Assembly: GCF_902459465.1 (NCBI RefSeq)
Contig: NC_047064.1
Location: 11,904,001 to 11,968,000, forward strand
Source: Asterias rubens
Taxonomy: Eukaryota
DNA length: 64,000 bases
Direction of reading: 5' to 3'
The stretch's first letter is position 1. Every line of letters begins with the position of its first letter. Positions 570 to 38,100 of this stretch are shown here, piece by piece. Made by a program: the position numbers and the translations under genes. Under the pieces are notes generated by a model. The model searched no databases. It saw nothing but the letters and a program-made list of their open reading frames with translations, and was not told the DNA's origin.

Positions 570-2284
570 TTGGCGCACTTTCATCCCATTCTGGCCCACT
601 GTGTGGCGGTCGCCAGAGAGATTGGCAACGGGGTACAGACCCCTTGGGGCCCCGTCGGAACGCTACGTTCCGAAGGGTCGCCCTCTACTTCAGGGTTTAC
701 CCACTGCTCGTGTATTCCCGCCCCGCAGCCGACCTCCGACACTACAACGGAGTCTGCTCGGGGACGCCCCTCCAAAAAGGGCAAGAAAGCCCGCCCTCGT
801 AGTCCCAGCTCGAGCGGCTCTACCTCCGATCGTCCCCACCGTGACAAACGTCACAAGGGCGGGGACCCGATCTCGAGGGAGGAATTTTTGGAAGCTTTTC
901 ACACCCTCGCGGCCTCAATTACGGGTCGTCGCGAGGGTGGTGGACAAGGCCCGTCTGACTTGGCCACCGAACCGGTGCCCCACAGTCAGCACGGCCATGG
1001 GTGGCTTGCACCGGGCCAACGGGGACTCCCCCACACGGCTAGCCGTGCGCCGGATTCCCCCCCGGGTTTGCCACAACCGCCCGCTAACCCATACGTTCAG
1101 GGGCGTGTGGCTACCACCCAATGGGGACCCCCTCAGGGGGGCCCGCCATGCATCAGCCTGCACCCGTCGGCGGCCTTTGAATCCGACCATGGGCGCCGTG
1201 ATGATGCCGGTTCGGAATCCCGTTCTTCGATGACATCTCGTCCCTCCGACTCGGCCGACTCGGCCAATGAGGAGGACGAGTTGGTCAGCTCCATTCAACG
1301 GTTGTCAGTCTCCGAGACCGAGCTACGCTTGGTTCAGAGAGACATGATAAGAGTTATGAATCTCCCCTGTGAGCCGGAACCCCCCTCCGACGAACGCCAA
1401 TCGTTCAAGAAGAGGGCGGGCCCCGCAACGGGCGTGACTAAACCCTTCCCGGTGATGCCCCTGGATCGGGTGTGCAGCGACCGGATGGATGGGGTAATGG
1501 GAACGAAGAAACACCGTACTCCAAACGTACGGAGCCGTATTACCGTTTCCCTCCAGCGGATTTTCAGAAATATTTCGCCACTCCCGTTCTGCCGGACTCA
1601 GCCTCCGACAAGCTGATCGCGGACAGGGGATCATCATCTTCCAAGCTCCCGTTTGCGGACAAGATCCGCGGCAAATTGGAGGACGTCACCCGAAAAATGG
1701 ATTCTTCGGCACGCATGGGTATACGCACAACATCCTTTCTCCTGCTCCTATCAGAATATCTGGAGCAGGGGTGCGACGAGGAAAACATGGTGCCGGGGGA
1801 CATGATGATTGCGGCCCTTCATTGTTTGGACAACGGTCTTTGTTACATCCTCGACCAGTTCACTAAGATAACGACCCTGGCGACGACGTCACGCCGCCCC
1901 AATGTGCTAGATGCACTTTTCCTGCCATCAGACGGGGCGCATAAACGCCTTGACGATCTACCACTCACCGGCGCCGACTTATTTTCTGGGCAGTTTCAGA
2001 CGTCCATGGAGGCTGAAGCGAAGCGCCTCAAAGCCACGGACAAAATCAATCTGAAAAAGCCCAACGCCCCGCCTAAGGCCGTGGGTAACAAGGCGAAGAA
2101 ACAACCTTCATTCGTCATCCCCCATCGCCGCCAACAAAAGGCGGCCCGTGGCAGTTTTCGTGGCCGCGCCGATAACACGGCGGGCGCACGTTACCCACAG
2201 ACTCAACCTGGCCAACCACGCACCCAGTCTGGTCGTGGTTTCCGAGCGCCCGCCCCCCGATATACCGGGGCGTGGCGCAAGTGA
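570..2284 (+). pseudogene. DIRS gag-like ORF1, 5'-truncated, frameshift near 1515
   Basis: ORFs 570-1616 and 1472-2284 align consecutively to ORF 26483-28672 (RQSFKKR; FQTSMEAEAKRLKATDKINL; GAWRK*). Confidence 0.88.
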
Positions 2285-4357
2285 CTTGACAAACTCCGAG
2301 CGGCCTCCCACCGACGGACCCGTGGGGGGCCGCCTCCGGAATTTTCTGGGGTCCTGGGGGCAAGTGACCTCCAACCGGGTGGTCCTCGAAACGATCGGCC
2401 GCGGTTACGCGCTCGAGTTTACGAGGACCCCCCCGTCGGACATGCTCAGCCGGCCGACACCCGTGCCGTCCGACTTAGCAAAGCGCCGCTCCCTCGAGGG
2501 GGAAATAAACGCCCTCCTCCTCAAGGGGGCGGTGCGTATCGTCCCCCGTTCTGGGACTCAGACAGGCTTCATGTCAACCTTCTTCTTGACTCCCAAGAAG
2601 GAGGCTGGCGTGTGGCGCCCGATTTTGAACTTAAAACCCCTCAACAAGTTCATCCGTCCGAAGCGTTTCCGTATGGAGACGCTCAGGACTATACTGAGTT
2701 CCATAGTGCCACCCGCATGGGCGGCGAGTCTCGACCTGAAGGACGCATACCTACACGTCCCAGTCAGGCCGGAGCACCACAAATTCCTACGTTTCCTATA
2801 CAACGATACCCTGTACGAATTTGTGGTGCTCCCATTCGGACTCTCCACCGCACCTCGGGTGTTCACCCGCATTGTAAAGACAATCGGGGCGGCACTACGG
2901 AGGCGGGGCATCATGATATTTGTATATCTGGACGACTGGTTGGTCGTGGGCCGTTCTCGAGAGGAGACGAAGGCAGCGCTCCAATATACCTGGCGCCTGA
3001 CCTCAGACCTCGGATTCATAATCAATACCGAGAAATCCCACCTTATCCCCTCGCAGGTTCCCACCTTTCTGGGTGCGTCTCTCGACCTGCGCAGGGGATT
3101 GGCCCGCCCTTCGGAGGAACGCCTACTGAACCTTCGGCAGTGCGTTTCTCTCTTCCTCCCAGCAGTGGTGGCCCCAGCGCTGGCCTGGCTCAGACTGTTG
3201 GGCCTTATGGCCAGCATGGTGGATTTGGTGGACTTCTGCAGGTTGAGGATGAGGCCCATTCAACTTCACCTGCTCTCCTTTTACAGGCCCATCTGTCACC
3301 GAATCCACCACCCGGTGCCGACCACGCCCTGGCTAGTCCCCCACCTTCGCTGGTGGCTAGCCGATGCGAACATCTCGCAGGGCCGGGCCTTTCGTCCGCC
3401 CCCACCGTCGGTGACCGTCACGACCGACGCGTCACTCCTCGGCTGGGGGGGGCAACCCTCCACCCGCGTCAAATCGCAGGCGTGTGGGGTTCCGAACACC
3501 GATCGGCCCACATCAACGTCCTTGAAATGTTGGCAGTCTCCAAGGCACTACGGCATTTCCAGTCGGATGACAGGGGCCGTGCTGTCCTGGTGAGATGCGA
3601 CAACGCCACAGTCGTGGCCTACATCAATCACCAGGGGGGCACCCGGTCGGGTCGCCTGTGTGCACTGGCCTGGGACCTCATCCACTGGTGCACACTGTGG
3701 GGAACAGCACTATCAGCAGTACACATTCCGGGCGTAGAGAATGTCACAGCCGACGCTCTCTCAAGGGGCTGGATTGCCCCCACGGAGTGGTCCCTTCTCC
3801 CACAGGTGGCTCGGTCGCTCTTCCACTTGATCGACCGGCCACACGTGGACCTGTTCGCCTCCCATGCGAACCACCAGTTGCCGATCTACTGCGCAAGGGG
3901 CCCAGACCCCAATGCATGGAAGATCGACGCTCTATCAGTAGAATGGGACGGCCTACTGGCTTATGCGTTCCCACCCATCTCGCTCGTCTCTCGGGTTCTG
4001 ACCAAGATCGAGAAAGAGGATTGCCGGGTCCTTCTCATAGCCCCGTTCTGGCCCCGCCAACCGTGGTTCCCACGACTCATCAGGTTACTGGTCCACCGTC
4101 CGGTGATCCTACCAGGGCGAGCGGATCTCCTGTACCAGCCCAGTTCGGGGATGGTCCATTCGGCTCCGGGGGATCTTCACCTGACGTGCTGGGTGCTGTC
4201 ACGCGATCCCTCCGCTCAGCAGGCCTTTCGCAACGGGCTGCAACAATCGCAGCCCAGTCACGACGGGCCTCCACCAGGAAGGTATACAACAGCCGACTAC
4301 GCCATTTCTTTAAATGGTGTGGCCGGGAATCCCTCCATCCTACCAATATTTCTGTAG
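2285..4357 (+). pseudogene. DIRS reverse transcriptase/RNase H/adenine-methyltransferase-like ORF, frameshifted at the G8 run 3445-3452
   Basis: RT motifs DLKDAY, LPFGLSTAP and YLDD and RNase H motif TTDAS are in ORF 2148-3593. HINVLE, RCDN, ADALSR, VDLFAS and AYAFPP continue in ORF 2612-4357. Confidence 0.93.
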
Positions 4358-5238
4358 GGGAGGTGGGGGATTTCCTGGTGTATCTCCTAGATAGCGGCCT
4401 GACGACCGGTACGGTCAGAAATTACAGGTCAGCCGTCGCTGCGATCCACCCCGGATTCCCAGACGGTTCCTCCGTCTCAGACAACGGGGCCCTTAGCCAG
4501 TTGATTAAGGGGATGTTTGTCACCCGTCCCCCAGAACGCAAACTCGTCCCGTCTTGGGACCTGTTCGACATTCTGTCAACCTTAGCAGGGCCTCCTTACG
4601 AGCCTATGGATTGCTCCACACTCCTACAGCTCTCAGTCAAGTTGGCGTTTCTCCTGGCCGTCGCTACTTCGCGACGGCGCAGTGAGCTGCACGCCCTGTC
4701 GGTAGAGACCGGACATATCCGATGGGAACCAGGCGGAGTCCGCCTGGTCCCCACGACCGGCTTTTTAACCAAGAACCAGTCAAGTTCCTTCACGCCCCCG
4801 GATATTTTTGTCCCGGACATCAAGTCCTTTTCATCAGAGGCGAAGGACAAACTGTGGTGCCCCGTCCGGGCACTTAAGTGGTACTTGAATCGTACGAAGT
4901 CGCTTCGTACGGACCATAAAAAGCTGTTCGTGATGACAACACCGCCCTTTCGGCCGGTGTCACAGTGCACCATCTCACGATGGATCGTGACTGCCATCCG
5001 CTCCATGCCGGGCGGCTGGCCGGCGACCGAGAATACGATTCGGGCGCATGATGTTAGGGGGGTATCCGCCTCTTGGGCCTTCTTTAAAGGGGTTCCCTTA
5101 GCAGATATCACCAAGGCGGCCTGCTGGAAGTGTCCTAACACCTTCAGCGACCTCTTCCTGAAGGATGTCCTCCAGACAGACGGCAGAGCCGGGAGAGAAG
5201 TGCTGAAGACGGCCAGTCAAGCTTCCCAGAAACGCTAA
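3595..5238 (+). CDS. DIRS tyrosine recombinase (547 aa); catalytic Tyr position is Phe
   Basis: Motifs RRSELHAL, FLTKNQ, AHDVR and ACWKCPNTFSDLFLKD; aligns to the YR at 28739-31630. Confidence 0.9.
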   Translation: MRQRHSRGLHQSPGGHPVGSPVCTGLGPHPLVHTVGNSTISSTHSGRRECHSRRSLKGLDCPHGVVPSPTGGSVALPLDRPATRGPVRLPCEPPVADLLRKGPRPQCMEDRRSISRMGRPTGLCVPTHLARLSGSDQDRERGLPGPSHSPVLAPPTVVPTTHQVTGPPSGDPTRASGSPVPAQFGDGPFGSGGSSPDVLGAVTRSLRSAGLSQRAATIAAQSRRASTRKVYNSRLRHFFKWCGRESLHPTNISVGEVGDFLVYLLDSGLTTGTVRNYRSAVAAIHPGFPDGSSVSDNGALSQLIKGMFVTRPPERKLVPSWDLFDILSTLAGPPYEPMDCSTLLQLSVKLAFLLAVATSRRRSELHALSVETGHIRWEPGGVRLVPTTGFLTKNQSSSFTPPDIFVPDIKSFSSEAKDKLWCPVRALKWYLNRTKSLRTDHKKLFVMTTPPFRPVSQCTISRWIVTAIRSMPGGWPATENTIRAHDVRGVSASWAFFKGVPLADITKAACWKCPNTFSDLFLKDVLQTDGRAGREVLKTASQASQKR

Positions 5239-23100: not shown

Positions 23101-26100
23101 AGTTGCCATCGCTGCGATTGGTGCCCCTGTAATTTCTTGCTTAGCCATGAAATTTGCTGCTTGAATTTTCTGCATTTAAGTTCAGTTGTCTAGTGGTAGA
23201 CATCTGCTTTGGCAATGCAAAGGTCCTAGGTACAAACCCCACCTGATTGGTTTGCATGTGAACAGTGCTTAAAGTGGGTTTATAGCGGTAAAGTAAAATG
23301 AAAGAAGAATAAGTATGTTATAAAACAAATCCTACTGATTCTAAATAAAATATGACAAACAAAACGACAAACCCAGCACTGTTTTGAACGCCTCCTGACC
23401 CATTATGAAAACAAACAAATTAAGATAATAGTGCGTGTGACCCCAACACGTCACTGACATGACACGGCGAAAATCACGTGACGCGGAAGTAATCTGTACA
23501 TAATACGTACTACATTGTAGTACAATGCACTGTCACAGTGTTCGGAGTTCACTCGACACACGCTGCAGTCATTGTAGTACACAATGCACTGTCACAGTGT
23601 TCGGAGTTCACTCGACACACGCTGCTGTCATTGTAGTACACAATGCACTGTCACAGTGTTCGGAGTTCACTTGACACATGCTGCAGTCATTGTAGTACAC
23701 AATGCACTGTCACAGTGTTCGGAGTTCACTCGACACACGCTGCAGTCATTGTAGTACACAATGCACTGTCACAGTGTTCGGAGTTCACTCGACACACGCT
23801 GCAGTCATTGTAGTACACAATGCACTGTCACAGTGTTCGGAGTTCACTTGACACACGCTGCAGTCATTGTAGTACACAATGCACTGTCACAGTGTTCGGA
23901 GTTCACTTGACACACGCTGCAGTCATTGTAGTACACAATGCACTGTCACAGTGTTCGGAGTTCACTCGACACACGCTGCAGTCATTGTAGTACACAATGC
24001 ACTGTCACAGTGTTCGGAGTTCACTCGACACACGCTGCAGTCATTGTAGTACAATGCACTGTCACAGTGTTCGGAGTTCACTTGACACACGCTGCAGTCA
24101 TTGTAGTACACAATGCACTGTCACAGTGTTCGGAGTTCACTCGACACACGCTGCAGTCATTGTAGTACACAATGCACTGTCACAGTGTTCGGAGTTCACT
24201 CGACACACGCTGCAGTCATTGTAGTACACAATGCACTGTCACAGTGTTCGGAGTTCACTCGACACACGCTGCAGTCATTGTAGTACACAATGCACTGTCA
24301 CAGTGTTCGGAGTTCACTCGACACACGCTGCTGTCATTGTAGTACACAATGCACTGTCACAGTGTTCGGAGTTCACTTGACACATGCTGCAGTCATTGTA
24401 GTACACAATGCACTGTCACAGTGTTCGGAGTTCACTCGACACACGCTGCAGTCATTGTAGTACACAATGCACTGTCACAGTGTTCGGAGTTCACTCGACA
24501 CACGCTGCAGTCATTGTAGTACACAATGCACTGTCACAGTGTTCGGAGTTCACTTGACACACGCTGCAGTCATTGTAGTACACAATGCACTGTCACAGTG
24601 TTCGGAGTTCACTTGACACACGCTGCAGTCATTGTAGTACACAATGCACTGTCACAGTGTTCGGAGTTCACTCGACACACGCTGCAGTCATTGTAGTACA
24701 CAATGCACTGTCACAGTGTTCGGAGTTCACTCGACACACGCTGCAGTCATTGTAGTACAATGCACTGTCACAGTGTTCGGAGTTCACTTGACACACGCTG
24801 CAGTCATTGTAGTACACAATGCACTGTCACAGTGTTCGGAGTTCACTTGACACACGCTGCAGTCATTGTAGTACACAATGCACTGTCACAGTGTTCGGAG
24901 TTCACTCGACACACGCTGCAGTCATTGTAGTACACAATGCACTGTCACAGTGTTCGGAGTTCACTCGACACACGCTGCAGTCATTGTAGTACACAATGCA
25001 CTGTCACAGTGTTCGGAGTTCACTCGACACACGCTGCAGTCATTGTAGTACACAATGCACTGTCACAGTGTTCGGAGTTCACTTGACACACGCTAGTACA
25101 CAATGCACTGTCACAGTGTTCGGAGTTCACTTGACACACGCTGCAGTCATTGTAGTACACAATGCACTGTCACAGTGTTCGGAGTTCACTTGACACACGC
25201 TGCAGTCATTGTAGTACACAATGCACTGTCACAGTGTTCGGAGTTCACTCGACACACGCTGCAGTCATTGTAGTACAATGCACTGTCACAGTGTTCGGAG
25301 TTCACTTGACACACGCTGCAGTCATTGTAGTACACAATGCACTGTCACAGTGTTCGGAGTTCACTCGACACACGCTGCAGTCATTGTAGTACACAATGCA
25401 CTGTCACAGTGTTCGGAGTTCACTCGACACACGCTGCAGTCATTGTAATACACAATGCACTGTCACAGTGTTCGGAGTTCACTCGACACACGCTGCAGTC
25501 ATTGTAGTACACAATGCACTGTCACAGTGTTCGGAGTTCACTTGACACACGCTGCAGTCATTGTAGTACACAATGCACTGTCACAGTGTTCGGAGTTCAC
25601 TTGACACACGCTGCAGTCATTGTAGTACACAATGCACTGTCACAGTGTTCGGAGTTCACTCGACACACGCTGCAGTCATTGTAGTATACAATGCACTTTA
25701 CAGTGTTCGGAGTTCACTCGACACACGCTGCAGTCATTGTAGTACAATGCACTGTCACAGTGTTCGGAGTTCACTCGACACACGCTGCAGTCATTGTAGT
25801 ACAATGCACTGTCACAGTGTTCGGAGTTCACTCGACACACGCTGCAGTCATTGTAGTACAATGCACTGTCACAGTGTTCGGAGTTCACTCGACACACGCT
25901 GCAGTCATTGTAGTACAATGCACTGTCACAGTGTTCGGAGTTCACTCGACACACGCTGCAGTCATTGTAGTACAATGCACTTTACAGTGTTCGGAGTTCA
26001 CTCGACACACGCTGCAGTCATTGTAGTACACAATGCACTGTCACAGTGTTCGGAGTTCACTTGACACACGCTGCAGTCATTGTAGTCCACTTCAGGGGAC

Positions 26101-29100
26101 TCCCTTACCTGTTAAACCTACAATTTGCATATTTCTCTTAGCCTTAGGCTTCCACGCTAGAATTTTATACCACAATAGGGCGCCCTCCATCGTCCGCCCC
26201 TGCCCACGGCCAACTCGTCCTCTTTTCTCTAGCGTTCAGCGAAGACAGACGTGTTTTTGTTACGGACGGATCCTTAAGTGATTTTTGGTATTTTCGGAGG
26301 AAGTTGTGAGTTTTTCCTTTAGTGATTATACTGTGCTTCTTACGTTTTATATTGTAAAGACGTTTACTTACTGTACAGAGTACACTCGTTTTCTGTTTTT
26401 GGTAATTAAAATTACACGAGTTGTGTCAGTGCTTTATTTTTGAATTGTTAAAAGATTTCACGTTACATTTTCAGTTATTAGGATGGCGGACTCACGCAAA
26501 AGCAAGCGTGGGGTGACGCCCAAAAATTTTGTTCCATGTTCTTCTTGCCGACGTATTAAGCCCCGTCCCGAGCAAGATTTACATGCCTTGTGCCCCCGTT
26601 GTAGACCGTGTAACCGGCAAGTGTCGTGCTCGGTTTGCAAGGACTGGGGGTCAGCAGATTGGGAGGCCGTAGCGGCATGGGTTCGTTCCCGGTCTCCCTC
26701 GGGTGAATCGGCAGCCAGTGCATCTTCCGGAGCTGTGTCCAGAGCCAAAAAGACGACATCGGCAGGACGATCGCCGCTTTCCGGGGTCATGCCTAAAGGG
26801 TCTCTGGCCACCGGTAAAGCATCGGGCCATACTACTAAATCCGTGCCTGTGAGGCCTCCGGAATTTAGTATAGTCACTGGCGCCGAGAGTCCAAGCAAGA
26901 TCACTCAATCGGGGGAAATGTCCCAGGCCGTTTTGAGTGATGGATCCGACACGGCGCCCCCAGCCGGGCAGCCCGTGATCGCTTCCAAACGTAAGCAGGG
27001 GAAGAAAAAGGGTACTTCCCGGGCCAAAGCTGTGCCTGCGGTGCAGGTAGCGACAGGCCACGTTAGCCCCGGTGAAACCGGAACAGACTCCGGTAAGACG
27101 GGAACGGTACCCGGAAACACCAGTGCCCGGCCAAAGACATTGGCGGGTGTTTATGTGGCCCCGGCCCCGAGCCACGGACAGCATCGGAGCCGGGATAAGT
27201 CCGATGGTGAGGAACGCCACCGGCGTAAAAGACGCCGAAGATATACTAGTTCCAGTTCATCATCCTCATCTTCCCGATCGCCACGGGGTCATCGCCGGCA
27301 TCATAGTAAGCGGGAAGACCCCACATCGGCCCTTCTATTACAAGGGTTCCGTGAACTGACGGCCAGTATCACGTCACTAATACCCAAGCCGACAGCGCCG
27401 GCTCAACCGGTGGCTCCACCGGAGCCAAGGCAGGTTTTACCGAGGATGGAGGACGTAATGTCAATCACCGTCTCGGATAGTTTTTCCGACCCGGGCAGTG
27501 TGTCAGATAGGGATCCACGCCGTGTTTCAGCAGCGGTAGCGGTCCCAGACACCGAACAATCCTCGGGAAATGAGGAAACTGTTCCCCTGACACAGCGACG
27601 GGATAACCGGGAACGACCCCCAGGGCGGGAGGATGATTCATCGGGTGATGAATCATCCTACCAATCCACAACCGACCAGCGATTGCGTATGGTCATGAAA
27701 GATATGGTACGGGTGTTGCACATACCTTCCAATGAAGAACCAGACCCGGTAGACGGCGCTAGACAATCGTTTAAGCGTCGTACCGCGCCGGTCGAACCAA
27801 AGGAATTTTTTCCGGTTCTTCCAATTGATCGGCTGTGTGCCGATCGTATGAACGCACTTTCGGAAGTGAAAAAGATACGTCCGTTCGTGCGCCGGGAAAC
27901 TCGCCCGTTCAGAGTACCTCAGGCAGACTTTGATAATTTTTTATCAGTGCCGCCCATGCCCGCTACAGTGCGTGATAAAATCACGGCGGATTCGGGCGGT
28001 CGAAGTACTTTGAAGTCACCTTTTCCGTCCAAGGAAAAAAATGTGTTTGAGGAGTCATTAATAAAAATTGATACGGCTTCACGGGCAGGAATTCGGGTGG
28101 CATGTTTTTTACAACTCCTTTCCGAATATTTGGTGTGTTCTTGTGAAGCAGATTCACCTGTATCACCAGAGGAAACCGAGACAGCTTTTCGTTGCCTTGA
28201 CGACGGGCTACGGCTGTGTATGGACCAGTTTATGCGGGTGTCCTTGATGACAATCAATGCACGGAGGACAAACGTTTTGGATACGATTTTTGTTCCCTCC
28301 GATGGATTGAGGTCCAACCTGGAATCTCTCCCCCGGCTGAGTTCCGATTTATTTGGAGGAAAATTCCAGGAGGTCATGCAAGCCGAGGCGAAGCGAATTA
28401 AAGCCACAGACAAGATTAACCTCAATAAACAATCAAGTCAAGGAGGCAGCTCTCGTCCGGCAAGAGGCAACAGTGGAGCTACTAAGGGCAAAACGTTCCC
28501 CCGTAAACCTTTGAAGCCGTTTGCTCCAAATCCATCGGGCTCTGCTTTCAAGCCCACTACAACTGTTGTACAGAGTCAGGCTTTTGGGTCGCGTTCACGA
28601 GGTAGAGCCGGCTTCACCCCCCGCTCCAAAGCTTCGCGCGGAGGTTACCGGGGTGGTGCTTGGCGCCGGTGACGCCCCCCTTCCCACGACCCCCTTTCCA
28701 GGGCCCGTGGGGGGTCGACTCATTTATTTCGCAAAGACTTGGGCCCTTTTGTGCAACGACGGGTGGGTACAAAAAACGGTAGCTTCCGGCTACAAAATAG
28801 AGTTTACAAGTACTCCCCCGTCTGCATACCTACCGAGAACAACACCGATTCCAACCGACCGAACCAAGCGTCATGCTCTGGAGTCGGAGATATCCGCCCT
28901 CTTGCAAAAACAAGCCATATGCAGAGTGCAAACAGAGGATGCGAATCGAGGGTTTTTCTCAACCTTTTTTCTAGCTCCAAAGAAAAACACAGGAGAATGG
29001 CGACCGATTTTAAACCTTCGGCCATTAAACAAATATGTCCGACCAAAACGGTTTCGGATGGAGTCGCTGCGGACAGTTTTGGATGCATTACCCATTCCAA

Positions 29101-32100
29101 CCTGGGCAGTGTTGATCGATCTAAAGGATGCCTATCTACATGTTCCGATGTGGGCCGAACATCGAGCGTTCCTACGGTTTTGTTACGACCAAAGGACTTA
29201 CGAATTTCTGACACTACCGTTCGGCCTTTCCACTGCCCCGAGGGTGTTTACACGGCTGGTGAAAGTCGTAGCAGGAATCCTCCGGCGACGTCAGGTACAG
29301 ATTTTTGTTTACCTGGACGATTGGCTCATTGTTGGGGAGACAAAGGAGGAAACAAGCTGGGCACTCAAACTAACTGCAAACATCATTTCGGAGTTAGGTT
29401 TTCTGATCAACATCGAAAAATCGCAGCCAAATCCGACAAGGCACCCAGTTTTCTTAGGAGCAAAACTGGACCTCCAGCGAGGACTAGCTTTTCCTACCGA
29501 GGATCGAGTCCACAATCTTTTGGACTGCATCACTCTGTTCAGAACTGCCAGTGTGGCCCCAGCAGTGGCATGGCTTCGGCTATTGGGCCTAATGGCAAGC
29601 ATGGTGGACGTACTCCCATGGTGCAGATTGCGGATGCGCCCGATACAGTTGCATCTACTTGCATACTACCGACCATGTATTCACCATATCCAGCGGCCAG
29701 TGCCAATCCCAAATATGATTTGCCCCCACCTGGACTGGTGGTCGCGGCGAACAAACATCATGGTGGGACTGATTTTCCCACGACCGCGACCTACCTTAAC
29801 TCTGGTGACCGATGCCTCCAACACAGGTTGGGGGGCACACATTGGAATGGAATCAGTAGCGGGCTCTTGGTCCCAGGCGGACAGTCAATACCACATCAAT
29901 GTCCTAGAACTGCTCGCAGTTTTTCGGGCACTGAAACATTTTGTCAGAATAGTGACAGGGGAAGTGGTCCTCATAAAATCGGACAACTCAACGGTTGTCT
30001 CTTACATAAACCGCCAGGGCGGAACGCATTCCCCGCAGTTGTGCATGCACACATGGGAGCTTCTGCTTTGGTGCCAGGCGAGACAGATCAATCTTACGGC
30101 GGTCCACTTAGCCGGAAAGCTGAATATCATGGCGGATGCTCTGTCTCGGGGGAAGGTCCTTCCAACCGAATGGACTCTGCACCCGGCAGTGGTTCAATCG
30201 ATCTTCCAAGTATGGGATCGTCCTCACATCGATCTGTTTGCGTCGGCACTGAACCATCAGTTACCGGTGTATTGTACACGCAACCAGGATCCGAAGGGAT
30301 GGGCAGCAGACGCTTTTTCCATCAGTTGGAAAAACATGCTAGCATACGCGTTTCCCCCGATCTCGCTTCTACCAAGGGTACTGACAAAGATCGAGGCGGA
30401 AGAGTGCAGAATCATCCTCATCGCACCATTTTGGCCACGCCAGCCTTGGTTTCAGAAAATAGTTCGCCTCTTGTGCAAGCCGCCGATAATTCTACCGGTG
30501 CGATCAGACCTACTGCGTCAACCACGGTCCCTGATCCCGCAACCAGGGGTAGAGTCCCTCCACCTAACATCTTGGATGCTGTCAAGCAATCACTGCGATC
30601 AGCGGGCCTTTCAGCAGACGCTGCCTCATTGGCAGCCCAAGGCCGCAGACTGTCTACCCGTAGGACTTACGACAGCCGATTACGACATTATCATAGGTGG
30701 TGCGAAGAACACACTTATGATCCATGCACAACGCCTCTAGCAGTGGTTGGAGATTTCTTTATGTACCTGTTTCATAAGGATTTGACGATATCCACTATTC
30801 GGGGCTATAGATCAGCTATAGCGGCTGTCCATAAAGGGTTCGCAGATGGATCTACTGTGTCCAATAACGCTAGCCTGGCTCAGCTCCTGCGGGGGATGTA
30901 TGTTGAAAGGCCTCCATCTAGGAAGCTGGTTCCATCCTGGGATCTTGCACAAGTTCTTAAGGTCCTGGCGGAACCGCCATATGAACCATTGGCGAATGCC
31001 CCCTTATTGGACCTATCAGTCAAAACAGTTTTCCTGTTGGCTACAGCCACAGCTAGACGAAGAAGTGAGCTCCATGCCCTTTCAGTTGAACCAGGGCACA
31101 TTAGATGGGAGCCAAGTGGAGTAAGACTGGTGCCTCGTCAGGGGTTTTTAACGAAGAATCAATCTCCTTCCTTCCTTCCTCCACCAATTTTCGTGCCGGA
31201 CCTTAAAAGTTTTTCCTCGGTCCCACAAGATAAACTGTGGTGCCCAGTTCGAGCACTCAAGTGGTACCTGGCTCAAACAAAACCCTTGAGAGGAGACACC
31301 ACCCAACTGTTTATTTCAACAAATAAACCACACAAAGCAGTCTCTGCAGACTCCATTTCCCGGTGGATAGTTACAGCTATCCAGGCATCTATCAAAGACT
31401 GGCCAAAGGTACCGGACATTCGGGTCAATGCCCATGACACCAGAGCCATGACGACATCATGGGCCTACTTTAAAGGTGTCCCCATTCAGGACATTTTGCA
31501 AGCAGCAGCCTGGAAAATACCATCAACATTCACATCCTGCTACCTGCGGGATGTTCTCCAAGCAGAAGGAAGGACGGGCCGTACAGCCCTCTCAATAGGA
31601 GCATCCAAGGAAGGTTCTACCCTGGAGTGATGGGGGCATTACCTCTGGATCAAGAAAGAATAAGCTTTCTGGTGAGTTCTTTAGTTTTTTATTCATACCT
31701 TTTGGTATGGGACAACGCGAAGGGACATTAAGTTTTAGGTTTCCCGAGACGCGGTTTTTTGAATAGGCTCGCTCTGAAGCCCACCATCCATTTTTCGGGG
31801 CTAGTCTATGCAAATTGTAGGTTTAACAGGTAAGGGAGTCCCCTGAAGTGGACTCCCCCAAATCTAGGTGATTTGGGAGTCCGCGAAGGGACGATACTTA
31901 CCTGTTAAACCCTCCCTCCCTCCTTCCCCACAGTGGCTCGCCTTACTAAGTTCTAGAGAAAAAGAGGACGAGTTGGCCGTGGGCAGGGGCGGACGATGGA
32001 GGGCGCCCTATTGTGGTATAAAATTCTAGCGTGGAAGCCTAAGGCTAAGAGAAATATGCAAATTGTAGGTTTAACAGGTAAGTATCGTCCCTTCGCGGAC

Positions 32101-35100
32101 TCCCAAATCACCTAGATTTGGGGGAGTACAATGCACTGTCACAGTGTTCGGAGTTCACTCGACACACGCTGCAGTCATTGTAGTACACAATGCACTGTCA
32201 CAGTGTTCGGAGTTCACTCGACACACGCTGCAGTCATTGTAGTACAATGCACTGTCACAGTGTTCGGAGTTCACTCGACACACACACGCTGCAGTCGTTT
32301 TATGCAATATTCCTTCTACTTTTAATGCTGGATTGAGTTGTTATTGTACAATTTGGCCATCAAAGTTAAGTGTAAATGGTACAAAATGTCAGTATCGTGT
32401 GTCATCTTGGGTGGATGCTCATAAGGCGAAAAATGTGGACGTATTTTGGTTGACTTTTTTCAAAGAACGGGCCACAGCGAGCATGGGTTTGACTCATAAA
32501 CAACACACGCTCCGACTTCTGATTTACAAGTTCATCATAGGCCTATAATTTGCTAGGCACACTTTTGTGATGATTGCGTGGTCAAAATCGTGGATTATAT
32601 GAAACGAATTTGTCTTGGTTCCAGAGGAAGAGACCCAGAGAGAGAGAAAGTGAGCAAGGGTATGTACACTTAATGCTTATTTCGTTTTTAATATCGTGGG
32701 AAGTATTTTTTCATTTCATTTAAGTTTTTATTTATTTGTATTTTATTTTATTTTATTTTATTTTATTTATTCATTTATTTCTTCTTCATTTTTTGAGAGG
32801 GGGGGGGATGGGGGTGGTCGATCATATGTAGAAAGAACCATGTATGATAAATTTTAGTGAGATGCAGTAGTTGTTTATCGGATTGGATGTCATTTAAGCT
32901 GTGAACTTCCATTTTGTAAGTGTACAAAACAAATATCTTTATGTTGTGTTACCTAATTAAGTAAGACAGATAACCACAAAGTTTCCAATAACCCAAACAG
33001 CCATATATTAAAATGTGTTGTTGTTGTTGGCCCTCTGAAAATTTGGTTCTTAATCGTTAGTTGTCCATTGATTTGTTCTCATTTTAAACGTTAAACAGGT
33101 ATTCAACAAGTGGAAGATGAATACAGTGAGCAACTCAGAGATTTGTATGAACCAGAAATACTGGTTGGATGTGAGTAATAATCAACAATCTCAAATCATT
33201 AGTCTGTTGCTTTAATAAAAGCGCACTGCATTTTCCATTCCCATTGCTATCAATTCTGAAAGTATTTGGTGGAGATTTTTCTCCCAGCCTAACTGTCACA
33301 TCCCGGAATTTGAGATAAGCCAAAACGGGACACAACCTTTGGTAGATAGTTTCACACACACACACAAGAGAGGGTAAAATCAAACGCATTGTCCACAAAT
33401 TCATTTACGAATGAAAGAAGGAGGCTCCACCCATTTAGTTTGCTTGGGGTGCGGTGCCTGGGGTGTCGGAATCAGGCCCGCTGAACACCAAGTCATTCCC
33501 GTCTCGCTGTAGTCTATATCAACTCTTTCATTTCTTCCTTCCCATCTCTCTACATCCCTCTCTCCCTCTCTCTTCTCCCATGTGCGGTTCTCCCTTCATG
33601 GGTAATTTGGGGGTTTCCTCTCCAAAATTGGGACCCTGGAAAGAACACATAATAACACCTTATTCCTCTGCAATATTATATACAAAAACTAATACCAATG
33701 GGCGACATCTTAATGTTTGAACACTTATCATTTTGACAATATTACAAAAATAAAAGCTCCACTTAGTTGTTTTAAAGGAAATTCTTCTTTAAACACAAAC
33801 TCCAAACTACTTGATCTCAATTTCTAAATCAAACAAATACTTTCTCAAATTAAATTATTAAACACAACAAAATATGATTACTTACAGCTGTAAATAATCA
33901 TATTTTGTCGTTCTTTCGATCCTGGCCTAGAGTAGTACGCCAACGAAACTGCTTTTAATGATCAGTTGACATAATATTACTTATGCCGTACTTGACGCTC
34001 TAGGAGCACTCATTTGCTCATTCAATATATACCTCTATAGAACTTAATCTGGAAACTGCTCAGTTCTCAATAACTGGCTCTAAAATATCGAGGCTGACAA
34101 ACACACCGTCCTCTCCTCAGATATCTCAAGTCGCAAGTGCCCACTCAAATAATATTTGCTCCCAACAAATTTATGAAACCCGCGAAAAGGTGTACCCTGT
34201 GACTCCAATGTATTGTTACCAAAGGGGTGCATAATGAAACAGAAGCACTACTGGCCCCATATTAATACAGCCAATCACAGAGGATTCTATTAACTTTACG
34301 TAACTCCCATTCTTTAAAATGAAGTCTACGAACTTTACAGGCCCATTGGCCATAAAAACCAAAATGATGTTACTCTTAAACGAGTGGTTAAGAGCATCGA
34401 ATTCAAGTTCTGGTGCAGTCACCGGAGTGTGGGTTCAAATCCCGGTCGTGACACTTGTGTCCTTGAGCAAGATACTTTACTATAATTGCTTCTCTTCACG
34501 GAATAAATGGGTACCTGCGAGGGTAGAAGTTGATATTGTGAATGAAAAAGCCTTTGGAGCGATATAAACTGTTGCCCAGTTGTATACTCCCAAGGGAGCT
34601 GAGAAACATTAAAAGGGATGTTATAGGCCCTATGACCAGGGCACTAATGTAAAGCGCATTGATACGTGTAATATTCGGGAATAACTGGAGAGTATTCAAG
34701 ACAAGATGTCTGCCTTTATGAGCATGTTAACATGTGCTAATAATATGAACACTTGAGGGCGCAATAACAATAGTGCGGAGTCATTATTCTACATCTCCCC
34801 CCAAGTACAGATTGGTGTACTTTAATCCCAAAAATTTTTCAACAAATCCAAGAGTGTCCATGAAAAGATCTCTAGAGTCCATGAATCATGTACGAATGTT
34901 AACGCTTAAACAACTTTAATAATTTTAAAAACCAAAACAGTAACTAGAATTTTTAGCAAACAAGACAACTGGAATAACAACTTCAAAAAATTCTGCATGA
35001 TTTTTATGCAGAGAGAGCAACAACTTCCCAACTCTCAATTTTTTAGCCTGCAATGTTTTTAATGCAGCTATTTGCTTTTTTGGGAACGTTTTTTGTTTTG

Positions 35101-38100
35101 TTTATAAATCAAGGCGGTTAGGCGGCTTCACTAAATGTCCTGATTGGGTCGTCATCACCGCTGGTGGTGGAGTACTCGATGGTGGGGACAACTCCACTCT
35201 GGAGAAGTGGATGGAGGAAACTGCTGCATTGGAGTAGGAAGTACTGTCTGCGTTGTTACATCAGAGGCTGGAGACAGTAGTGCATCTGGGTCGGGTGTTT
35301 GAGGGGTGTGGTCTGGTGTGGGGACGAGAGCTGATCGATTTCGGCGAACTGTGCCAAGATGGCTGGGATGATTTAGCGAGGATGGTCTCTTGGCGGTTCT
35401 GGTCTCGGATCCAAACTGAGTCACCAGGGTGTAGTGTTGGTAGAGTCGTAGCACGGTGACGAAGATTGAAGTTGTGCTGTTGCTTTGTGCGTTACGCTTC
35501 TTCTTTCTGTCTGATCGTCTGGTCCTGTTGAGCTTTCGGATGTAGATTTGATGGAAGGATAGGCAGGGTTGTCTTTAGTTTCCTGCCCATCAATAGTTCG
35601 CTTGGGGACAGGCCATTTTGAAGTAGGGATGAGCGATACATCAGAAGGGCGAGGTACGGGTCTGTGTTCTTCTTAAGCAGCCCTTTGATCGTGCGAACTG
35701 CTCTCTCGGCTTCCCCATTTGCCTGTGGGTTCCGTGGGGAACTAGTTGTGTGGATGAATCCATACGTCTTTGCAAACTGGAGGAATGAGGCTGAGCTAAA
35801 TTGTGGCCCATTGTCGGACATAATCACATCTGGGATTCCGTGTACTGCAAAGATTTCCTTCAAGGCTTGGATCACAGCAGCTGAGGTTTGGACAGATGAG
35901 AGAGACTTTATTTCTATCCAGCGTGAATAGTAGTCAATGACGATGAGGTAGATTTTCCCCCGATACTCAAACAAATCCGCTCCCAGTCTTTCCCAGGGGC
36001 GTGACGGGAATGATGCTGGCATAAGAGGTTCACGCTGTTCTGGTCGATGCTTTGCACAGGTCACACATTTGGAGATCATGTCTTCAATACTCTTGGAGAG
36101 ACCAGGCCACCAAACAGATGTGCGTGCTCGGGCTCGGCATTTAGTGATACCAAGATGGCCTTGATGGATACGATCAAGTATATCCAATCTCATGGATCGT
36201 GGGATAACAATGCGATCATCATACAGAAGAAGATCATCGAGGATAGAGAGATGACTTCGGTTTTCCCAGTACTGGCGCAGTAGTGTGGAGTGTGTGGCAT
36301 GTATACGGGCCAACCGCCAATGCAGAACTCCTTTATCTGTGTGCATTCCTCGTCTGATTTCTGTGCTGCAGCTATTTCGAGTAGACGTTGCGAAGTTGCT
36401 GGTAGTGAAGTCAAAACGTGATTACAGAAATTCTCTATTTTGGATATCAGAGCTGTGTCGGTTTCATCTGGTGTACCAACAGGAGCACGGGATAGTGCAT
36501 CAGCAGTAGTCTGGAGCTTGCCGGGAACATACTCAACAGTCGGACTAAATCTCATCAATCGAAGACGGAACCAAAGAATACATGGGGGCATCTTGGAAAG
36601 TTCCTTTGTCTGAAGGAGAGACACAAGTGGTTTGTGGTCTGTCTCAAGAGTGAAGTGGAGACCGAGGACATAGTCAGAGAACTTTTCACAACCCCAGGTT
36701 GCAGCTAATGCTTCCTTCTCGATGACTGCATGTCGCTTCTCCGTGTCAGATAGAGAACGCGATGCGTAGCAGATTGGGTGACGTTTCCAATTGTCTTGAG
36801 TCTGAAGCAGAACGGCGCCAATTCCAGATGAAGAAGTATCCGTGGCTACAAAGGTTGGACGGGATGGTTCATAGTGAGCCAGGACTGCAGATGAGAGAAG
36901 TAGATCTTTCACTCGTTGAAAAGAACTCTGCTGGGCTTCCCCCCAATACCAGATTGTGTCTTTCCTGAGCAACTGGCGTAATGGCTTGTTAATCTCTGCC
37001 AAACCAGGGACAAATTTGCCGAGTTGGTTGACCATTCCCATGAATCTCTGAAGCTCAGTGATGTTGGATGGGACAGGATATTCTGCGATGGCTGTAGTTT
37101 TGCCTTTATCTGCGTGAATCCCTTCTGTGTCTATCACGTGGCCCAAGAACTTGATGGAGTGTTTGGAGCAGTTGAAGCAATATCGGCCTGAAGGACTCCA
37201 GTAGTCGCTGTTACTTGTGACTTCACCAAGGAATGGTAAATCATCGTCGAAAGAATCCTGGACTTCATGTACCTTTGTGGTGTTGCGTTTGGATGTATTT
37301 CCACTTAAGCATACTGGCTTGAAATGTCCTGGTTTTGAGCAGGTGTCACATACAGCATCTTTCGCTGGGCAGTCACGACGGGGATGGCTTGTTCTTCCAC
37401 ACCATCTACAACTGCGTGACTTTGAATCATGTTCGTGGGTGTACTGTTTGGTGCGAGGCTGTCCCTTAGGTTTCGCAACATGATCAACGCTAGAAGAAGT
37501 GGCCATGTCACCACATACTATGTCACGACTATCCTTTCTAGCTGCAGACTGGCGGCATATCTGGACTGCTTTGGTCAGATTGAGATCAGCTTTGGTTTGA
37601 AGAGAGTCAGACAGTTTATCATCTAGTACTCCCACAACGATTCTATCTCTGATGAGGCTTTCTTCAAGATCACCATATTGACAATTGTCAGCCAGTCTAA
37701 ACAGATCTTGGATAAATATGTCGATTAATTCATTTGGCAGCTGTTTACTTCGATTAAATCGAGCCCTCTCGACGATCACGTTGCGTCTGCTTTCATAATG
37801 CTTATCGAGAGCTGCCTAAACTTCAACATATGTGGCCGTTTCCTCTTTAATACTGAGTGCCACAATGATATCGTCGGCACATTCCCCCATAGAATACAAC
37901 AGAGTGCTCACCTGTTCCCGGTCGCCTTTGATGTTGAGGCTGGAGGCGATTCAATAGCGCTCGAATCTGTTGACCCATTTTTGCTAAAGTTCACTCTGGT
38001 GTGGTCCGTTTCCACCTTCAAACTTGCCTGGCAAGGGTAAATGGGTTCGTGGGGCGTTTTCCATGTCAGATGTGGGTCTTGATAACCGCTGCCACCATGT

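What the first reader, a model, noticed from the sequence alone, without database searches (positions are those of the whole stretch)
26483..31630. DIRS gag and tyrosine recombinase form one 1,716-codon frame split by a single UGA-C stop, with the same geometry in a second divergent family
Seen: ORF1 (26483-28672) and the YR ORF (28739-31630) are in the same frame. The 22 codons between them (28673-28738) contain no stop, so only TGA-CGC at 28670 separates them. In DIRS-A the gag stop is TGA-CTT (2282), and that frame stays open for ~390 codons to the G8 frameshift at ~3450; two TGA stops (3523, 3568) then interrupt it in that defective copy. Established: UGA followed by C is a leaky termination context, and gag-pol readthrough occurs in retroelements. 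Inference: a ~1,715-aa Gag-linker-YR fusion could package the recombinase into particles. The in-frame layout may already be known in some DIRS1 elements; I cannot check.
Basis: partly seen in the sequence, partly recalled or inferred. Interest (0 to 1): 0.8.

Follow-up and report, generated by a model that had tools for sequence, protein, structure and literature searches.

The report
Leaky gag stop feeds recombinase frame
In this starfish DIRS1-like retrotransposon, and in about 20 distant relatives, one leaky-type stop codon separates gag from a roughly 980-codon frame that crosses the reverse-transcriptase gene and ends in the tyrosine recombinase. This suggests, but does not prove, that the recombinase is made as a read-through extension of Gag.

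Summary
Frame 2 of window 26483-31630 is 1,716 codons with one stop, TGA-C at 28670, and defective DIRS-A has the same layout. The "YR ORF" is not a 22-codon linker plus recombinase. Its first ~630 codons overprint the RT/RNase H ORF (28515-30740, +1 frame), are unconserved and are predicted to be unstructured. The Cre-like recombinase is only the last ~335 codons. This is the published "long ORF overlap" of DIRS1-like elements.

New findings:
- The overprinted frame has 0 stops where 13-33 are expected, in every family tested.
- About 21 deeply diverged families have exactly one stop between gag and this frame: TGA 15, TAG 6, TAA 0, mostly UGA-C/UGA-CUN or UAG-G.
- The first AUG in the frame is scattered (codon 22-543), and no Met is conserved at the start of the recombinase.
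- pol has no AUG and starts 6-17 codons after the same stop in +1.

Best reading (~0.5): the gag stop is a recoding node, where readthrough gives Gag-spacer-YR and a +1 shift gives Gag-Pol.

There is no direct translation evidence, and a few families use other frame layouts.

The parts
26084..32130 (+). Full-length DIRS1-like retrotransposon (family B), inserted in a 57-59-nt satellite. The right end is approximate.
   Evidence: Other genomic copies share the sequence from 26084 to about 32125, and their flanks differ.
26104..26226 (+). Left inverted terminal repeat
   Evidence: 123 nt, 100% complementary to 31960-32082
31960..32082 (+). Right inverted terminal repeat
31807..31911 (+). Internal complementary region. 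31807-31854 is complementary to the left terminus 26084-26131. 31844-31911 is complementary to the right terminus 32068-32135.
   Evidence: I3 at 100%, I2 at 96%
26483..28672 (+). gag ORF, 729 codons, ending ...GGAWRR-UGA
   Evidence: Homologous to the upstream ORFs of related elements. The C-terminal motif RY(S/T)G(G/A)WR(R/K)* is shared with DIRS-A and L045.
28667..28675 (+). Proposed recoding node CGG-UGA-CGC. The 0 frame continues as RPPSHD...; the +1 frame (GAC GCC CCC...) is pol.
28671..30740 (+). pol (RT, RNase H, C-terminal region) in the +1 frame. The open frame starts at 28515. There is no ATG before the RT domain. The conserved PVGGRL motif lies 13 codons after the gag stop.
   Evidence: Pfam RVT_1 1.4e-20 and RT_RNaseH 1.3e-6
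28673..30568 (+). Overprinted spacer: about 632 codons of the gag frame laid over pol. It is stop-free, unconserved and predicted to be unstructured.
   Evidence: 0 stops against 19.4 expected. Cross-family identity is 14-24%. pLDDT is 24-35 with no secondary structure. No Pfam hit.
30569..31630 (+). Tyrosine recombinase proper (core-binding plus catalytic domain), ending at TGA 31628
   Evidence: Identity is 35-51% from codon ~651. pLDDT is 65-95 for residues 633-930. Foldseek hits Cre recombinase, E 5e-8, TM 0.62-0.69 by target. ARRRSE, HDTR and SCY motifs are present.
1442..2284 (+). DIRS-A: 3' part of gag, ending TGA-CTT at 2282. gag is frameshifted near 1520.
2283..4357 (+). DIRS-A pol, in the +1 frame relative to gag, broken by a frameshift at the G8 run 3445-3452
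2285..5238 (+). DIRS-A gag-frame continuation. It is open to ~3450, continues in frame 1 after the frameshift with TGA at 3523 and 3568, then runs to the recombinase (4318-5205) and TAA 5236.

Best explanation
Window 26084-~32130 is an intact, young DIRS1-like tyrosine-recombinase retrotransposon of a sea star. It has about 11 copies at 98.5-99.7% identity. The gag stop (CGG-UGA-C at 28670) is proposed to be a programmed recoding node.
- Most ribosomes terminate and make Gag.
- A fraction read the UGA as sense and continue in the gag frame. They cross about 630 codons that overprint pol and are selected only to be stop-free, forming a disordered spacer. They then translate the ~335-residue Cre-like recombinase. 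The product is a ~1,715-aa Gag-spacer-YR protein.
- pol (RT/RNase H/C-terminal domain) has no AUG and starts just after the same stop in the +1 frame. It would be made as Gag-Pol by a +1 shift at or next to that stop.

The element has no protease. Two alternative Gag fusions from one site would bring each enzyme to Gag assemblies without processing, and this would explain the 'long ORF overlap' of DIRS1-like elements.

Shown: the anatomy, the selection for an open frame, the conservation of a single leaky-type stop, and the absence of a conserved start for pol or YR. Inferred: that readthrough and the +1 shift actually occur, and what the fusions do.
For: 1. One stop in 1,716 codons.
2. The overprinted frame has 0 stops against 19.4 +/- 4.0 expected in B. 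It has 0 against 13-33 expected in every one of about 25 related loci. The -1 frames of gag and of the YR-only part carry 26-61 and 16-19 stops.
3. In about 21 families whose pol identity is only 40-56%, the gag frame and the 970-1030-codon YR frame are separated by exactly one stop. These come from Asterias and from other assemblies and metagenomes. The stops are TGA 15, TAG 6, TAA 0. The next base is C in 13 and G in 6. UGA-CUN occurs 9 times, including UGA-CUA 4 times, which is the published high-readthrough consensus (PMC4359377).
4. The first AUG of that frame lies anywhere from codon 22 to 543. In L042, 427 AUG-less codons are open where 10.3 stops are expected (0 of 2000 resamplings had none). 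No Met is conserved at the start of the recombinase; that column is M/L/V/I.
5. pol has no AUG. Its conserved PVGGRL motif starts 6-17 codons after the stop in +1. Conservation of the gag protein runs up to the stop. The codon before the stop is CCC or UUU in 7 families and UCC in 3. These resemble known shift-at-stop sites (prfB CUU-UGA-C, antizyme UCC-UGA-U; from my own knowledge).
6. In families with the other layout, where pol is in frame with gag, the YR frame still opens 37-70 nt before the gag stop. In L091 it opens right at a G-GGU-UUU heptamer.
7. The spacer shows 14-24% identity, pLDDT around 30 and no secondary structure, while the C-terminus folds as Cre.
8. Pfam finds no protease or DDE integrase domain in the element's ORFs.
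Against: - There is no direct evidence of translation. The RNA-library contigs only show that the element's sequence is present, without splice joints, and contigs cannot exclude rare spliced or subgenomic RNAs.
- The same-frame layout is an automatic consequence of pol = gag+1 and YR frame = pol-1, so it may not be selected for readthrough as such.
- The conserved UGA/UAG and its context could serve a +1 shift alone.
- Some families have pol in frame with gag (L069 even has UAA). Two mollusc-like families appear to have the YR frame at gag+1. Readthrough therefore cannot be the universal route to YR.
- Structure downstream of the stop is only marginally above control windows: mean z -1.51 against -0.46 to -1.18.
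- Precedent for caution: in Tca2, an in-frame gag-UGA-pol junction did not direct readthrough in a reporter (PMC2194720).
- A 630-residue junk spacer inside an enzyme fusion is unusual.
Confidence: 0.5

Rival explanations
1. The gag UGA is only a +1 frameshift site for Gag-Pol. The long recombinase frame is translated by another route: termination-reinitiation, non-AUG or internal initiation, an IRES, or a subgenomic or spliced RNA whose 5' end lies near the gag stop. Being in frame with gag is then a by-product of pol = gag+1 and YR frame = pol-1.
For: pol lacks an AUG and starts right after the stop in +1. CCC, UUU or UCC precede the stop in 10 of 21 families. Families with other frame relations still keep the long YR frame. 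The Tca2 junction had an internal promoter instead of readthrough.
Against: There is no conserved AUG anywhere near the 5' end of the frame, and the first AUG falls at codon 22-543. The frame is open exactly from the gag stop, or in the other layout from a short overlap with the gag end. The UGA-CUN and UAG-G contexts are readthrough-type. No splice joint appears in the RNA contigs, though this is weak evidence.
Confidence: 0.25
2. The recombinase is reached from pol. Ribosomes already translating Gag-Pol slip -1 into the overprinted frame somewhere within pol, giving Gag-(part of Pol)-YR.
For: The YR frame is always pol-1. One family has a -1 slippery heptamer, but it lies at the gag end rather than inside pol.
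Against: A shift near the end of pol would not need about 630 upstream codons to be stop-free, yet all of them are, in every family. I did not search for a conserved slippery site inside pol.
Confidence: 0.07
3. The ~630-codon overprinted region is a functional protein or domain in its own right, not a mere spacer. This is compatible with readthrough.
For: It has been kept open for very long evolutionary times. Identity at the pol wobble positions is slightly above expectation: 0.29-0.38 against 0.26-0.31.
Against: Identity is 14-24%, no more than expected for an overprint on a conserved gene. There is no Pfam hit. AlphaFold gives pLDDT around 30 and no secondary structure with a 16-sequence alignment. 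The small wobble excess can be explained by stop avoidance.
Confidence: 0.1
4. The open frame is a compositional accident of a GC-rich element.
For: The element has ~51% GC.
Against: 0 stops are observed against 19.4 +/- 4.0 expected under synonymous resampling and 22.3 under codon-order shuffling. The third frame has 40 stops. The same result holds in about 25 independent loci, including AT-richer ones that expect about 32 stops.
Confidence: 0.01

Closest known systems
'Long ORF overlap' of DIRS1-like retrotransposons (Piednoel et al. 2011, PMC3266345; also PMC6681497, PMC9210276)
   Same: It is the same object. [quoted passage not shown] The element has ITRs plus an internal complementary region.
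   Different: Those papers list the overlap as present or absent and treat the YR ORF as a separate ORF. In the papers I could search, none discusses that the ORF is the in-frame continuation of gag behind a single conserved UGA/UAG, that it lacks a conserved start, or how it is translated.
Gammaretrovirus (MuLV-type) gag-UAG-pol readthrough; alphavirus and plant-virus UGA-C readthrough; cellular UGA-CUA(G) readthrough genes (PMC4359377)
   Same: A single leaky stop lies after a structural gene, followed by a long in-frame ORF that encodes an enzyme. The contexts are UGA-C/UGA-CUA and UAG-G.
   Different: Here the in-frame extension is not pol. It is a ~630-codon overprint of pol followed by a recombinase. 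There is no protease to release the enzyme. A downstream stimulatory structure is not clearly present. Readthrough is untested.
+1 frameshifting at or next to a stop or slow codon (prfB CUU-UGA-C, antizyme UCC-UGA-U, Ty1/Ty3, Euplotes)
   Same: pol is in +1, lacks an AUG and begins directly after a UGA/UAG. CCC-UAG-G, UUU-UGA-C and UCC-UGA occur in 10 of 21 families.
   Different: No single conserved shift site exists; the other families have CGG, AAG, GAA, AGA and other codons before the stop. It is untested. The resemblance to the named sites rests on my own knowledge, not on a tool result.
Candida albicans Tca2 gag-UGA-pol (PMC2194720)
   Same: A retroelement with gag and the downstream ORF in frame, separated by one UGA.
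   Different: In Tca2 the junction did not direct readthrough in a reporter, and an internal promoter was found. This shows that the layout alone does not prove readthrough.

Membership tests
DIRS1-like retrotransposons (order DIRS) | Encodes a tyrosine recombinase instead of a DDE integrase | tested here: met
   The C-terminal 335 residues fold with pLDDT 65-95 and match Cre recombinase (E 5e-8, TM 0.62-0.69 by target). Candidate catalytic motifs ARRRSE (Arg), HDTR (His-x-x-Arg) and SCY (Tyr) are present. Pfam finds no rve domain.
DIRS1-like retrotransposons (order DIRS) | RT and RNase H related to Ty3/gypsy; no protease | tested here: met
   RVT_1 1.4e-20 and RT_RNaseH 1.3e-6. No protease family hit in any ORF.
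DIRS1-like retrotransposons (order DIRS) | Inverted terminal repeats plus an internal complementary region matching both termini (not split direct repeats) | tested here: met
   ITRs are 123 nt and 100% complementary. 31807-31854 is complementary to the left terminus and 31844-31911 to the right terminus.
DIRS1-like retrotransposons (order DIRS) | Methyltransferase-like domain downstream of RNase H | not tested
   pol has about 200 conserved residues after RNase H (identity 0.38-0.47). Pfam gave no hit, and I ran no MT profile.
DIRS1-like retrotransposons (order DIRS) | Integration without target-site duplication | tested here: met
   The satellite unit ...CATTGT|AGT|ACA... is interrupted at AGT and resumes after the element with no duplication. 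The flanks of 6 other copies are unrelated.
Programmed stop-codon readthrough | Leaky stop (UGA/UAG) in a readthrough-favouring 3' context, conserved across relatives | tested here: met
   TGA 15, TAG 6, TAA 0. The +4 base is C in 13 and G in 6. UGA-CUN occurs 9 times.
Programmed stop-codon readthrough | Downstream in-frame ORF under selection to stay open, with no start of its own | tested here: met
   0 stops against 13-33 expected. First AUG at codon 22-543. No conserved Met.
Programmed stop-codon readthrough | Downstream stimulatory RNA structure | tested here: inconclusive
   Mean z of the 80 nt after the stop is -1.51 (7 of 21 below -2). Control windows give -0.46 to -1.18.
Programmed stop-codon readthrough | Extended protein actually produced | not testable with these tools
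   Only Logan contigs were available: no raw reads, ribosome profiling or proteomics.
Programmed +1 ribosomal frameshifting (for pol) | Essential downstream ORF in +1 without an initiation codon, starting at the end of the upstream ORF | tested here: met
Programmed +1 ribosomal frameshifting (for pol) | Conserved shift-prone site | tested here: inconclusive
   CCC, UUU or UCC precedes the stop in 10 of 21 families, with varied codons in the rest.

The most novel reading that the evidence does not exclude
One stop codon acts as a three-way switch in a protease-less retroelement. Termination gives Gag, a +1 shift gives Gag-Pol, and readthrough gives Gag-spacer-recombinase. In sister lineages the roles are permuted: readthrough gives Pol and a -1 shift gives the recombinase. 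The 2-kb 'long ORF overlap' of DIRS1-like elements would then exist because both enzymes must hang off the same Gag terminus.
Probability: 0.3. Interest if true: 0.8.

Novelty: new variant of a known kind. Interest (0 to 1): 0.65.

Why it matters
The papers I could search do not address how DIRS-type retrotransposons translate their reverse transcriptase and recombinase, or why the two genes overlap for about 2 kb. The comparison gives a concrete, testable answer: both are alternative C-terminal extensions of Gag made at one recoding site. If confirmed, it would add a retroelement class to the list of programmed readthrough users. It would possibly be the first case of readthrough and +1 frameshifting competing at the same stop. 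It would also be an extreme example of a frame conserved only for being open, about 630 codons with no sequence constraint. In practice, it means annotation of DIRS1-like elements should treat gag and the 'YR ORF' as one recoded unit.

Tried and rejected
- Within-family copies. I compared 11 copies at 98.5-99.7% identity. UGA-C is kept in all, but this is trivial at that identity. Post-insertion stops hit pol and the overprinted frame alike, so the copies have no discriminating power.
- More families from the genome itself. I used other assemblies and metagenome contigs instead.
- RNA evidence. Only Logan contigs were available. Fragments of the element occur in RNA libraries, and 4.4-4.6-kb contigs of unknown library type span the gag stop. 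The only skip joint is a 463-nt AC..CC skip inside gag, probably a deletion variant; one strand-switch joint lies at the right-end repeats. This cannot exclude rare spliced RNAs.
- RNA structure after the stop. Hairpins that use the G-run of the PVGG codons occur in several families, but z-scores barely exceed control windows.
- Constraint on the spacer's amino acids. The wobble-identity test shows only a slight excess. Pfam finds nothing. AlphaFold finds no structure.
- A conserved Met at the start of the recombinase. Rejected: the column is M in 6 of 16 families and L/V/I in the others.
- Chance or composition as the cause of the open frame. Rejected.
- Literature. Searches for readthrough or frameshifting in DIRS found nothing specific. 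Older key papers (Cappello 1985; Goodwin and Poulter 2001; Poulter and Goodwin 2005) are not in the library and could not be checked.
- My automatic call that L055 has the other geometry was wrong. Inspection shows pol in +1 right after the stop, with a later frameshift mutation.


Full report
**What is in the window.**
Frame 2 (position mod 3) has no stop between 26441 and 31661 except TGA 28670 and TGA 31628. ORF1 runs from ATG 26483 to 28672 and ends ...GGAWRR-TGA, followed by CGC.

The element is a complete DIRS1-like retrotransposon.
- It has 123-nt inverted terminal repeats that are 100% complementary.
- An internal region is complementary to both termini.
- Pfam finds RT and RNase H, and no protease or DDE integrase.
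- It is inserted at an AGT of a 57-59-nt satellite without target duplication.

The genome holds about 11 copies at 98.5-99.7% identity, several with all frames intact, so the family is young. A protein hit whose contig length equals that of one G000 contig names Asterias rubens as the host.

The 'YR ORF' (28739-31630) is mostly not recombinase. A second long ORF, 28515-30740, lies in the +1 frame relative to gag and carries RT and RNase H.

- The gag-frame translation across that region has no Pfam hit.
- Across 16 families it is only 14-24% identical over codons 1-650.
- From codon ~651 identity jumps to 35-51%.
- With a 16-sequence alignment, AlphaFold gives pLDDT 24-35 and no secondary structure for residues 8-627.
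- Residues 633-930 form a confident fold that matches Cre recombinase (E 5e-8, TM 0.62-0.69 by target).
- The motifs ARRRSE, HDTR and SCY are present.

The layout is therefore gag, one stop, about 630 codons overprinted on pol, then a ~335-residue recombinase. This is the 'long ORF overlap' already described for DIRS1-like elements. [quoted passage not shown]

**Is the open frame more than chance?**
Yes.
- Resampling synonymous codons of pol expects 19.4 +/- 4.0 stops in the overprinted frame of B (minimum 6 of 3000 resamplings). None is observed.
- None of the 116 codons that precede an AA/AG/GA-initial codon ends in T, although 19% of all codons do.
- The third frame has 40 stops.
- The -1 frames of gag and of the YR-only part have 45 and 18 stops.
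- DIRS-A gives 0 against 7.3 and 0 against 4.4.

The frame is kept open by selection, but its amino-acid sequence is not conserved beyond what the overlap with pol imposes. Wobble identity is only slightly above expectation.

**DIRS-A.**
The gag stop is TGA-CTT at 2282. pol is in +1. pol and the gag-frame continuation both change frame at the G8 run 3445-3452. TGA 3523 and TGA 3568 then interrupt the continuing frame, and gag itself is frameshifted near 1520.

**Comparison beyond the window.**
A database search with the recombinase part returned many ORFs of about 950-965 residues that carry no RT Pfam domain. These are the same long frame in many assemblies.

I examined DNA from five assemblies (L040-L044) and about 25 metagenome contigs (L045-L091). 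pol identities to B are 40-56%, and tree branches are 0.5-1.5 changes per site.

In about 21 distinct families, including A and B:
- The frame upstream of the YR frame's 5' stop is a long ORF of 345-972 codons, or runs to the contig end.
- These upstream ORFs are homologous to one another.
- Exactly one stop separates gag from a 970-1030-codon frame.
- pol is always in +1.
- Every family has 0 stops in the overlap against 13-33 expected.

The separating stop is TGA in 15 families, TAG in 6 and TAA in none, whereas YR stops include TAA. The next base is C in 13 families and G in 6. UGA-CUN occurs 9 times, including UGA-CUA 4 times. The TAG families read CCC-UAG-G or CAA-UAG-C. UGA-CUA is the published consensus for high basal readthrough (PMC4359377). 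Neither the pol nor the spacer amino acids are conserved at these positions, so the conservation is at the nucleotide level.

Three further Asterias families (L013, L017, L021-23) also have TGA 11-12 codons before the PVGGRL motif in the pol-1 frame.

**No independent start for either enzyme.**
pol has no ATG before the RT domain. Its conserved N-terminal motif PVGGRL begins 6-17 codons after the gag stop in +1. Conservation of the gag protein runs to the last codon.

In the YR frame the first ATG lies at codon 22 to 543, depending on the family. In L042, 427 ATG-less codons are open where 10.3 stops are expected (0 of 2000 resamplings had none).

At the start of the recombinase proper, the only partly conserved Met column is M in 6 of 16 families and L/V/I in the others. 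Several families have no Met within 200 codons.

So the recombinase can only be made as the C-terminal part of a protein whose translation starts far upstream. The frame is open exactly back to the gag stop.

**Mechanism proposed.**
The simplest reading is that ribosomes enter both downstream frames from gag at its stop. Readthrough gives Gag-spacer-YR, and a +1 shift gives Gag-Pol.

The codon before the stop allows perfect +1 re-pairing (CCC-U, UUU-U) in 7 families. It is UCC, as at the antizyme site, in 3. The comparison with prfB, antizyme and Euplotes rests on my own knowledge.

A leaky stop in a weak context serves both events, so its conservation does not tell them apart. What specifically argues for readthrough is that the 0 frame is kept open for about 630 codons from that stop.

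The lack of a protease gives a rationale, which is inference: two separate Gag fusions need no processing.

**Exceptions.**
- L069/L082, L091 and L065 have pol in frame with gag behind one stop (TAA-CTC, TGA-CTC, TAG-ATC) and the YR frame in -1.
- In these families the YR frame still opens only 37-70 nt before the gag stop. In L091 it opens right at a G-GGU-UUU heptamer.
- In the pol tree these families form a grade inside one clade, with layout-1 families nested among them.
- By gene coordinates alone, two mollusc-like families (P0111, P0114) have the YR frame at gag+1, and one sea-urchin-like copy (P0058) is inconsistent. Four others known only by coordinates (P0003, P0050, P0073, P0024) are in frame.

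What seems general is that the YR frame is pol-1 and reaches back to the gag terminus. Being in frame with gag is the commonest layout, not a universal one. It also follows arithmetically from pol = gag+1.

**What could not be shown.**
- RNA-library contigs contain fragments of the element.
- Contigs of 4.4-4.6 kb, of unknown library type, span the gag stop.
- No splice-like joint was seen. The one skip joint is a 463-nt AC..CC deletion within gag, and a strand-switch joint lies at the right-end repeats. Contigs cannot exclude rare RNAs or show translation.
- The 80 nt after the stop fold slightly better than shuffles (mean z -1.51, 7 of 21 below -2), but control windows reach -1.18, so a stimulatory structure is not established.
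- Tca2 is a warning: its in-frame gag-UGA-pol junction did not support readthrough in a reporter (PMC2194720).

**Novelty and verdict.**
The overlap is known, and so is readthrough in retroelements. I found no paper that relates the DIRS1 YR frame to the gag stop or proposes recoding. The classic DIRS papers are not in the searchable library, so prior mention cannot be excluded.

I rate the observation confirmed and the interpretation partly supported. The finding is a new variant of a known kind, with moderate to high interest, because it turns an old descriptive oddity into a specific, testable translation model.

Noticed in passing
window 24500-26098 and ~32130-32362: A tandem array of a 57-59-nt satellite (unit ACACGCTGCAGTCATTGTAGTACACAATGCACT...) flanks element B on both sides. 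The element interrupts one unit at AGT without duplication. Other copies of the family have unrelated flanks.
   Followed up: partly
G000:C5:14373928-14375943 (-) and G000:C5:16974456-16975733 (+), outside the window: Two copies of a 55-56%-identity DIRS family have a 1,436-1,441-aa open frame containing pol, against 766 aa in the other copies. This could be gag and pol fused in frame by an indel.
   Followed up: no
L040-L091 (pol stop codons): The pol ORF ends in TAG in about 23 of 28 loci, although the YR and gag stops vary. This is probably a constraint from the conserved recombinase codons that overlap it. It is unexplained.
   Followed up: no
L091:875-881: In a family where pol is in frame with gag, the -1 (YR) frame opens 3 nt before a G-GGT-TTT heptamer, 31 nt upstream of the gag stop. 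This looks like a classical -1 frameshift site.
   Followed up: partly
all junctions, e.g. window 28709-28717, 2324-2331: The Val-Gly-Gly codons of the pol PVGGRL motif are nearly always written as a G5-G7 run (GUGGGGGG). In several families this run pairs with a C-rich stretch just after the gag stop. Codon choice there may be constrained at the RNA level.
   Followed up: partly
window 7797-9593 (+): ORF with an endonuclease/exonuclease/phosphatase domain and the start of an RT domain: a LINE-type retrotransposon fragment.
   Followed up: no
window 35492-37779 (-): Ty3/gypsy-type RNase H and integrase (H2C2 zinc finger plus rve) ORFs: an LTR-retrotransposon fragment.
   Followed up: no
window 26755-27219: One contig of run X10 skips 463 nt inside gag (ends AC..CC, not intron-like). 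This is probably a deletion variant of the family.
   Followed up: no
L043 (ERZ25069853 contig): A dead copy with gag frameshifted and a TAA inside pol still has the 995-codon YR frame intact. This is a single case and may be chance.
   Followed up: no
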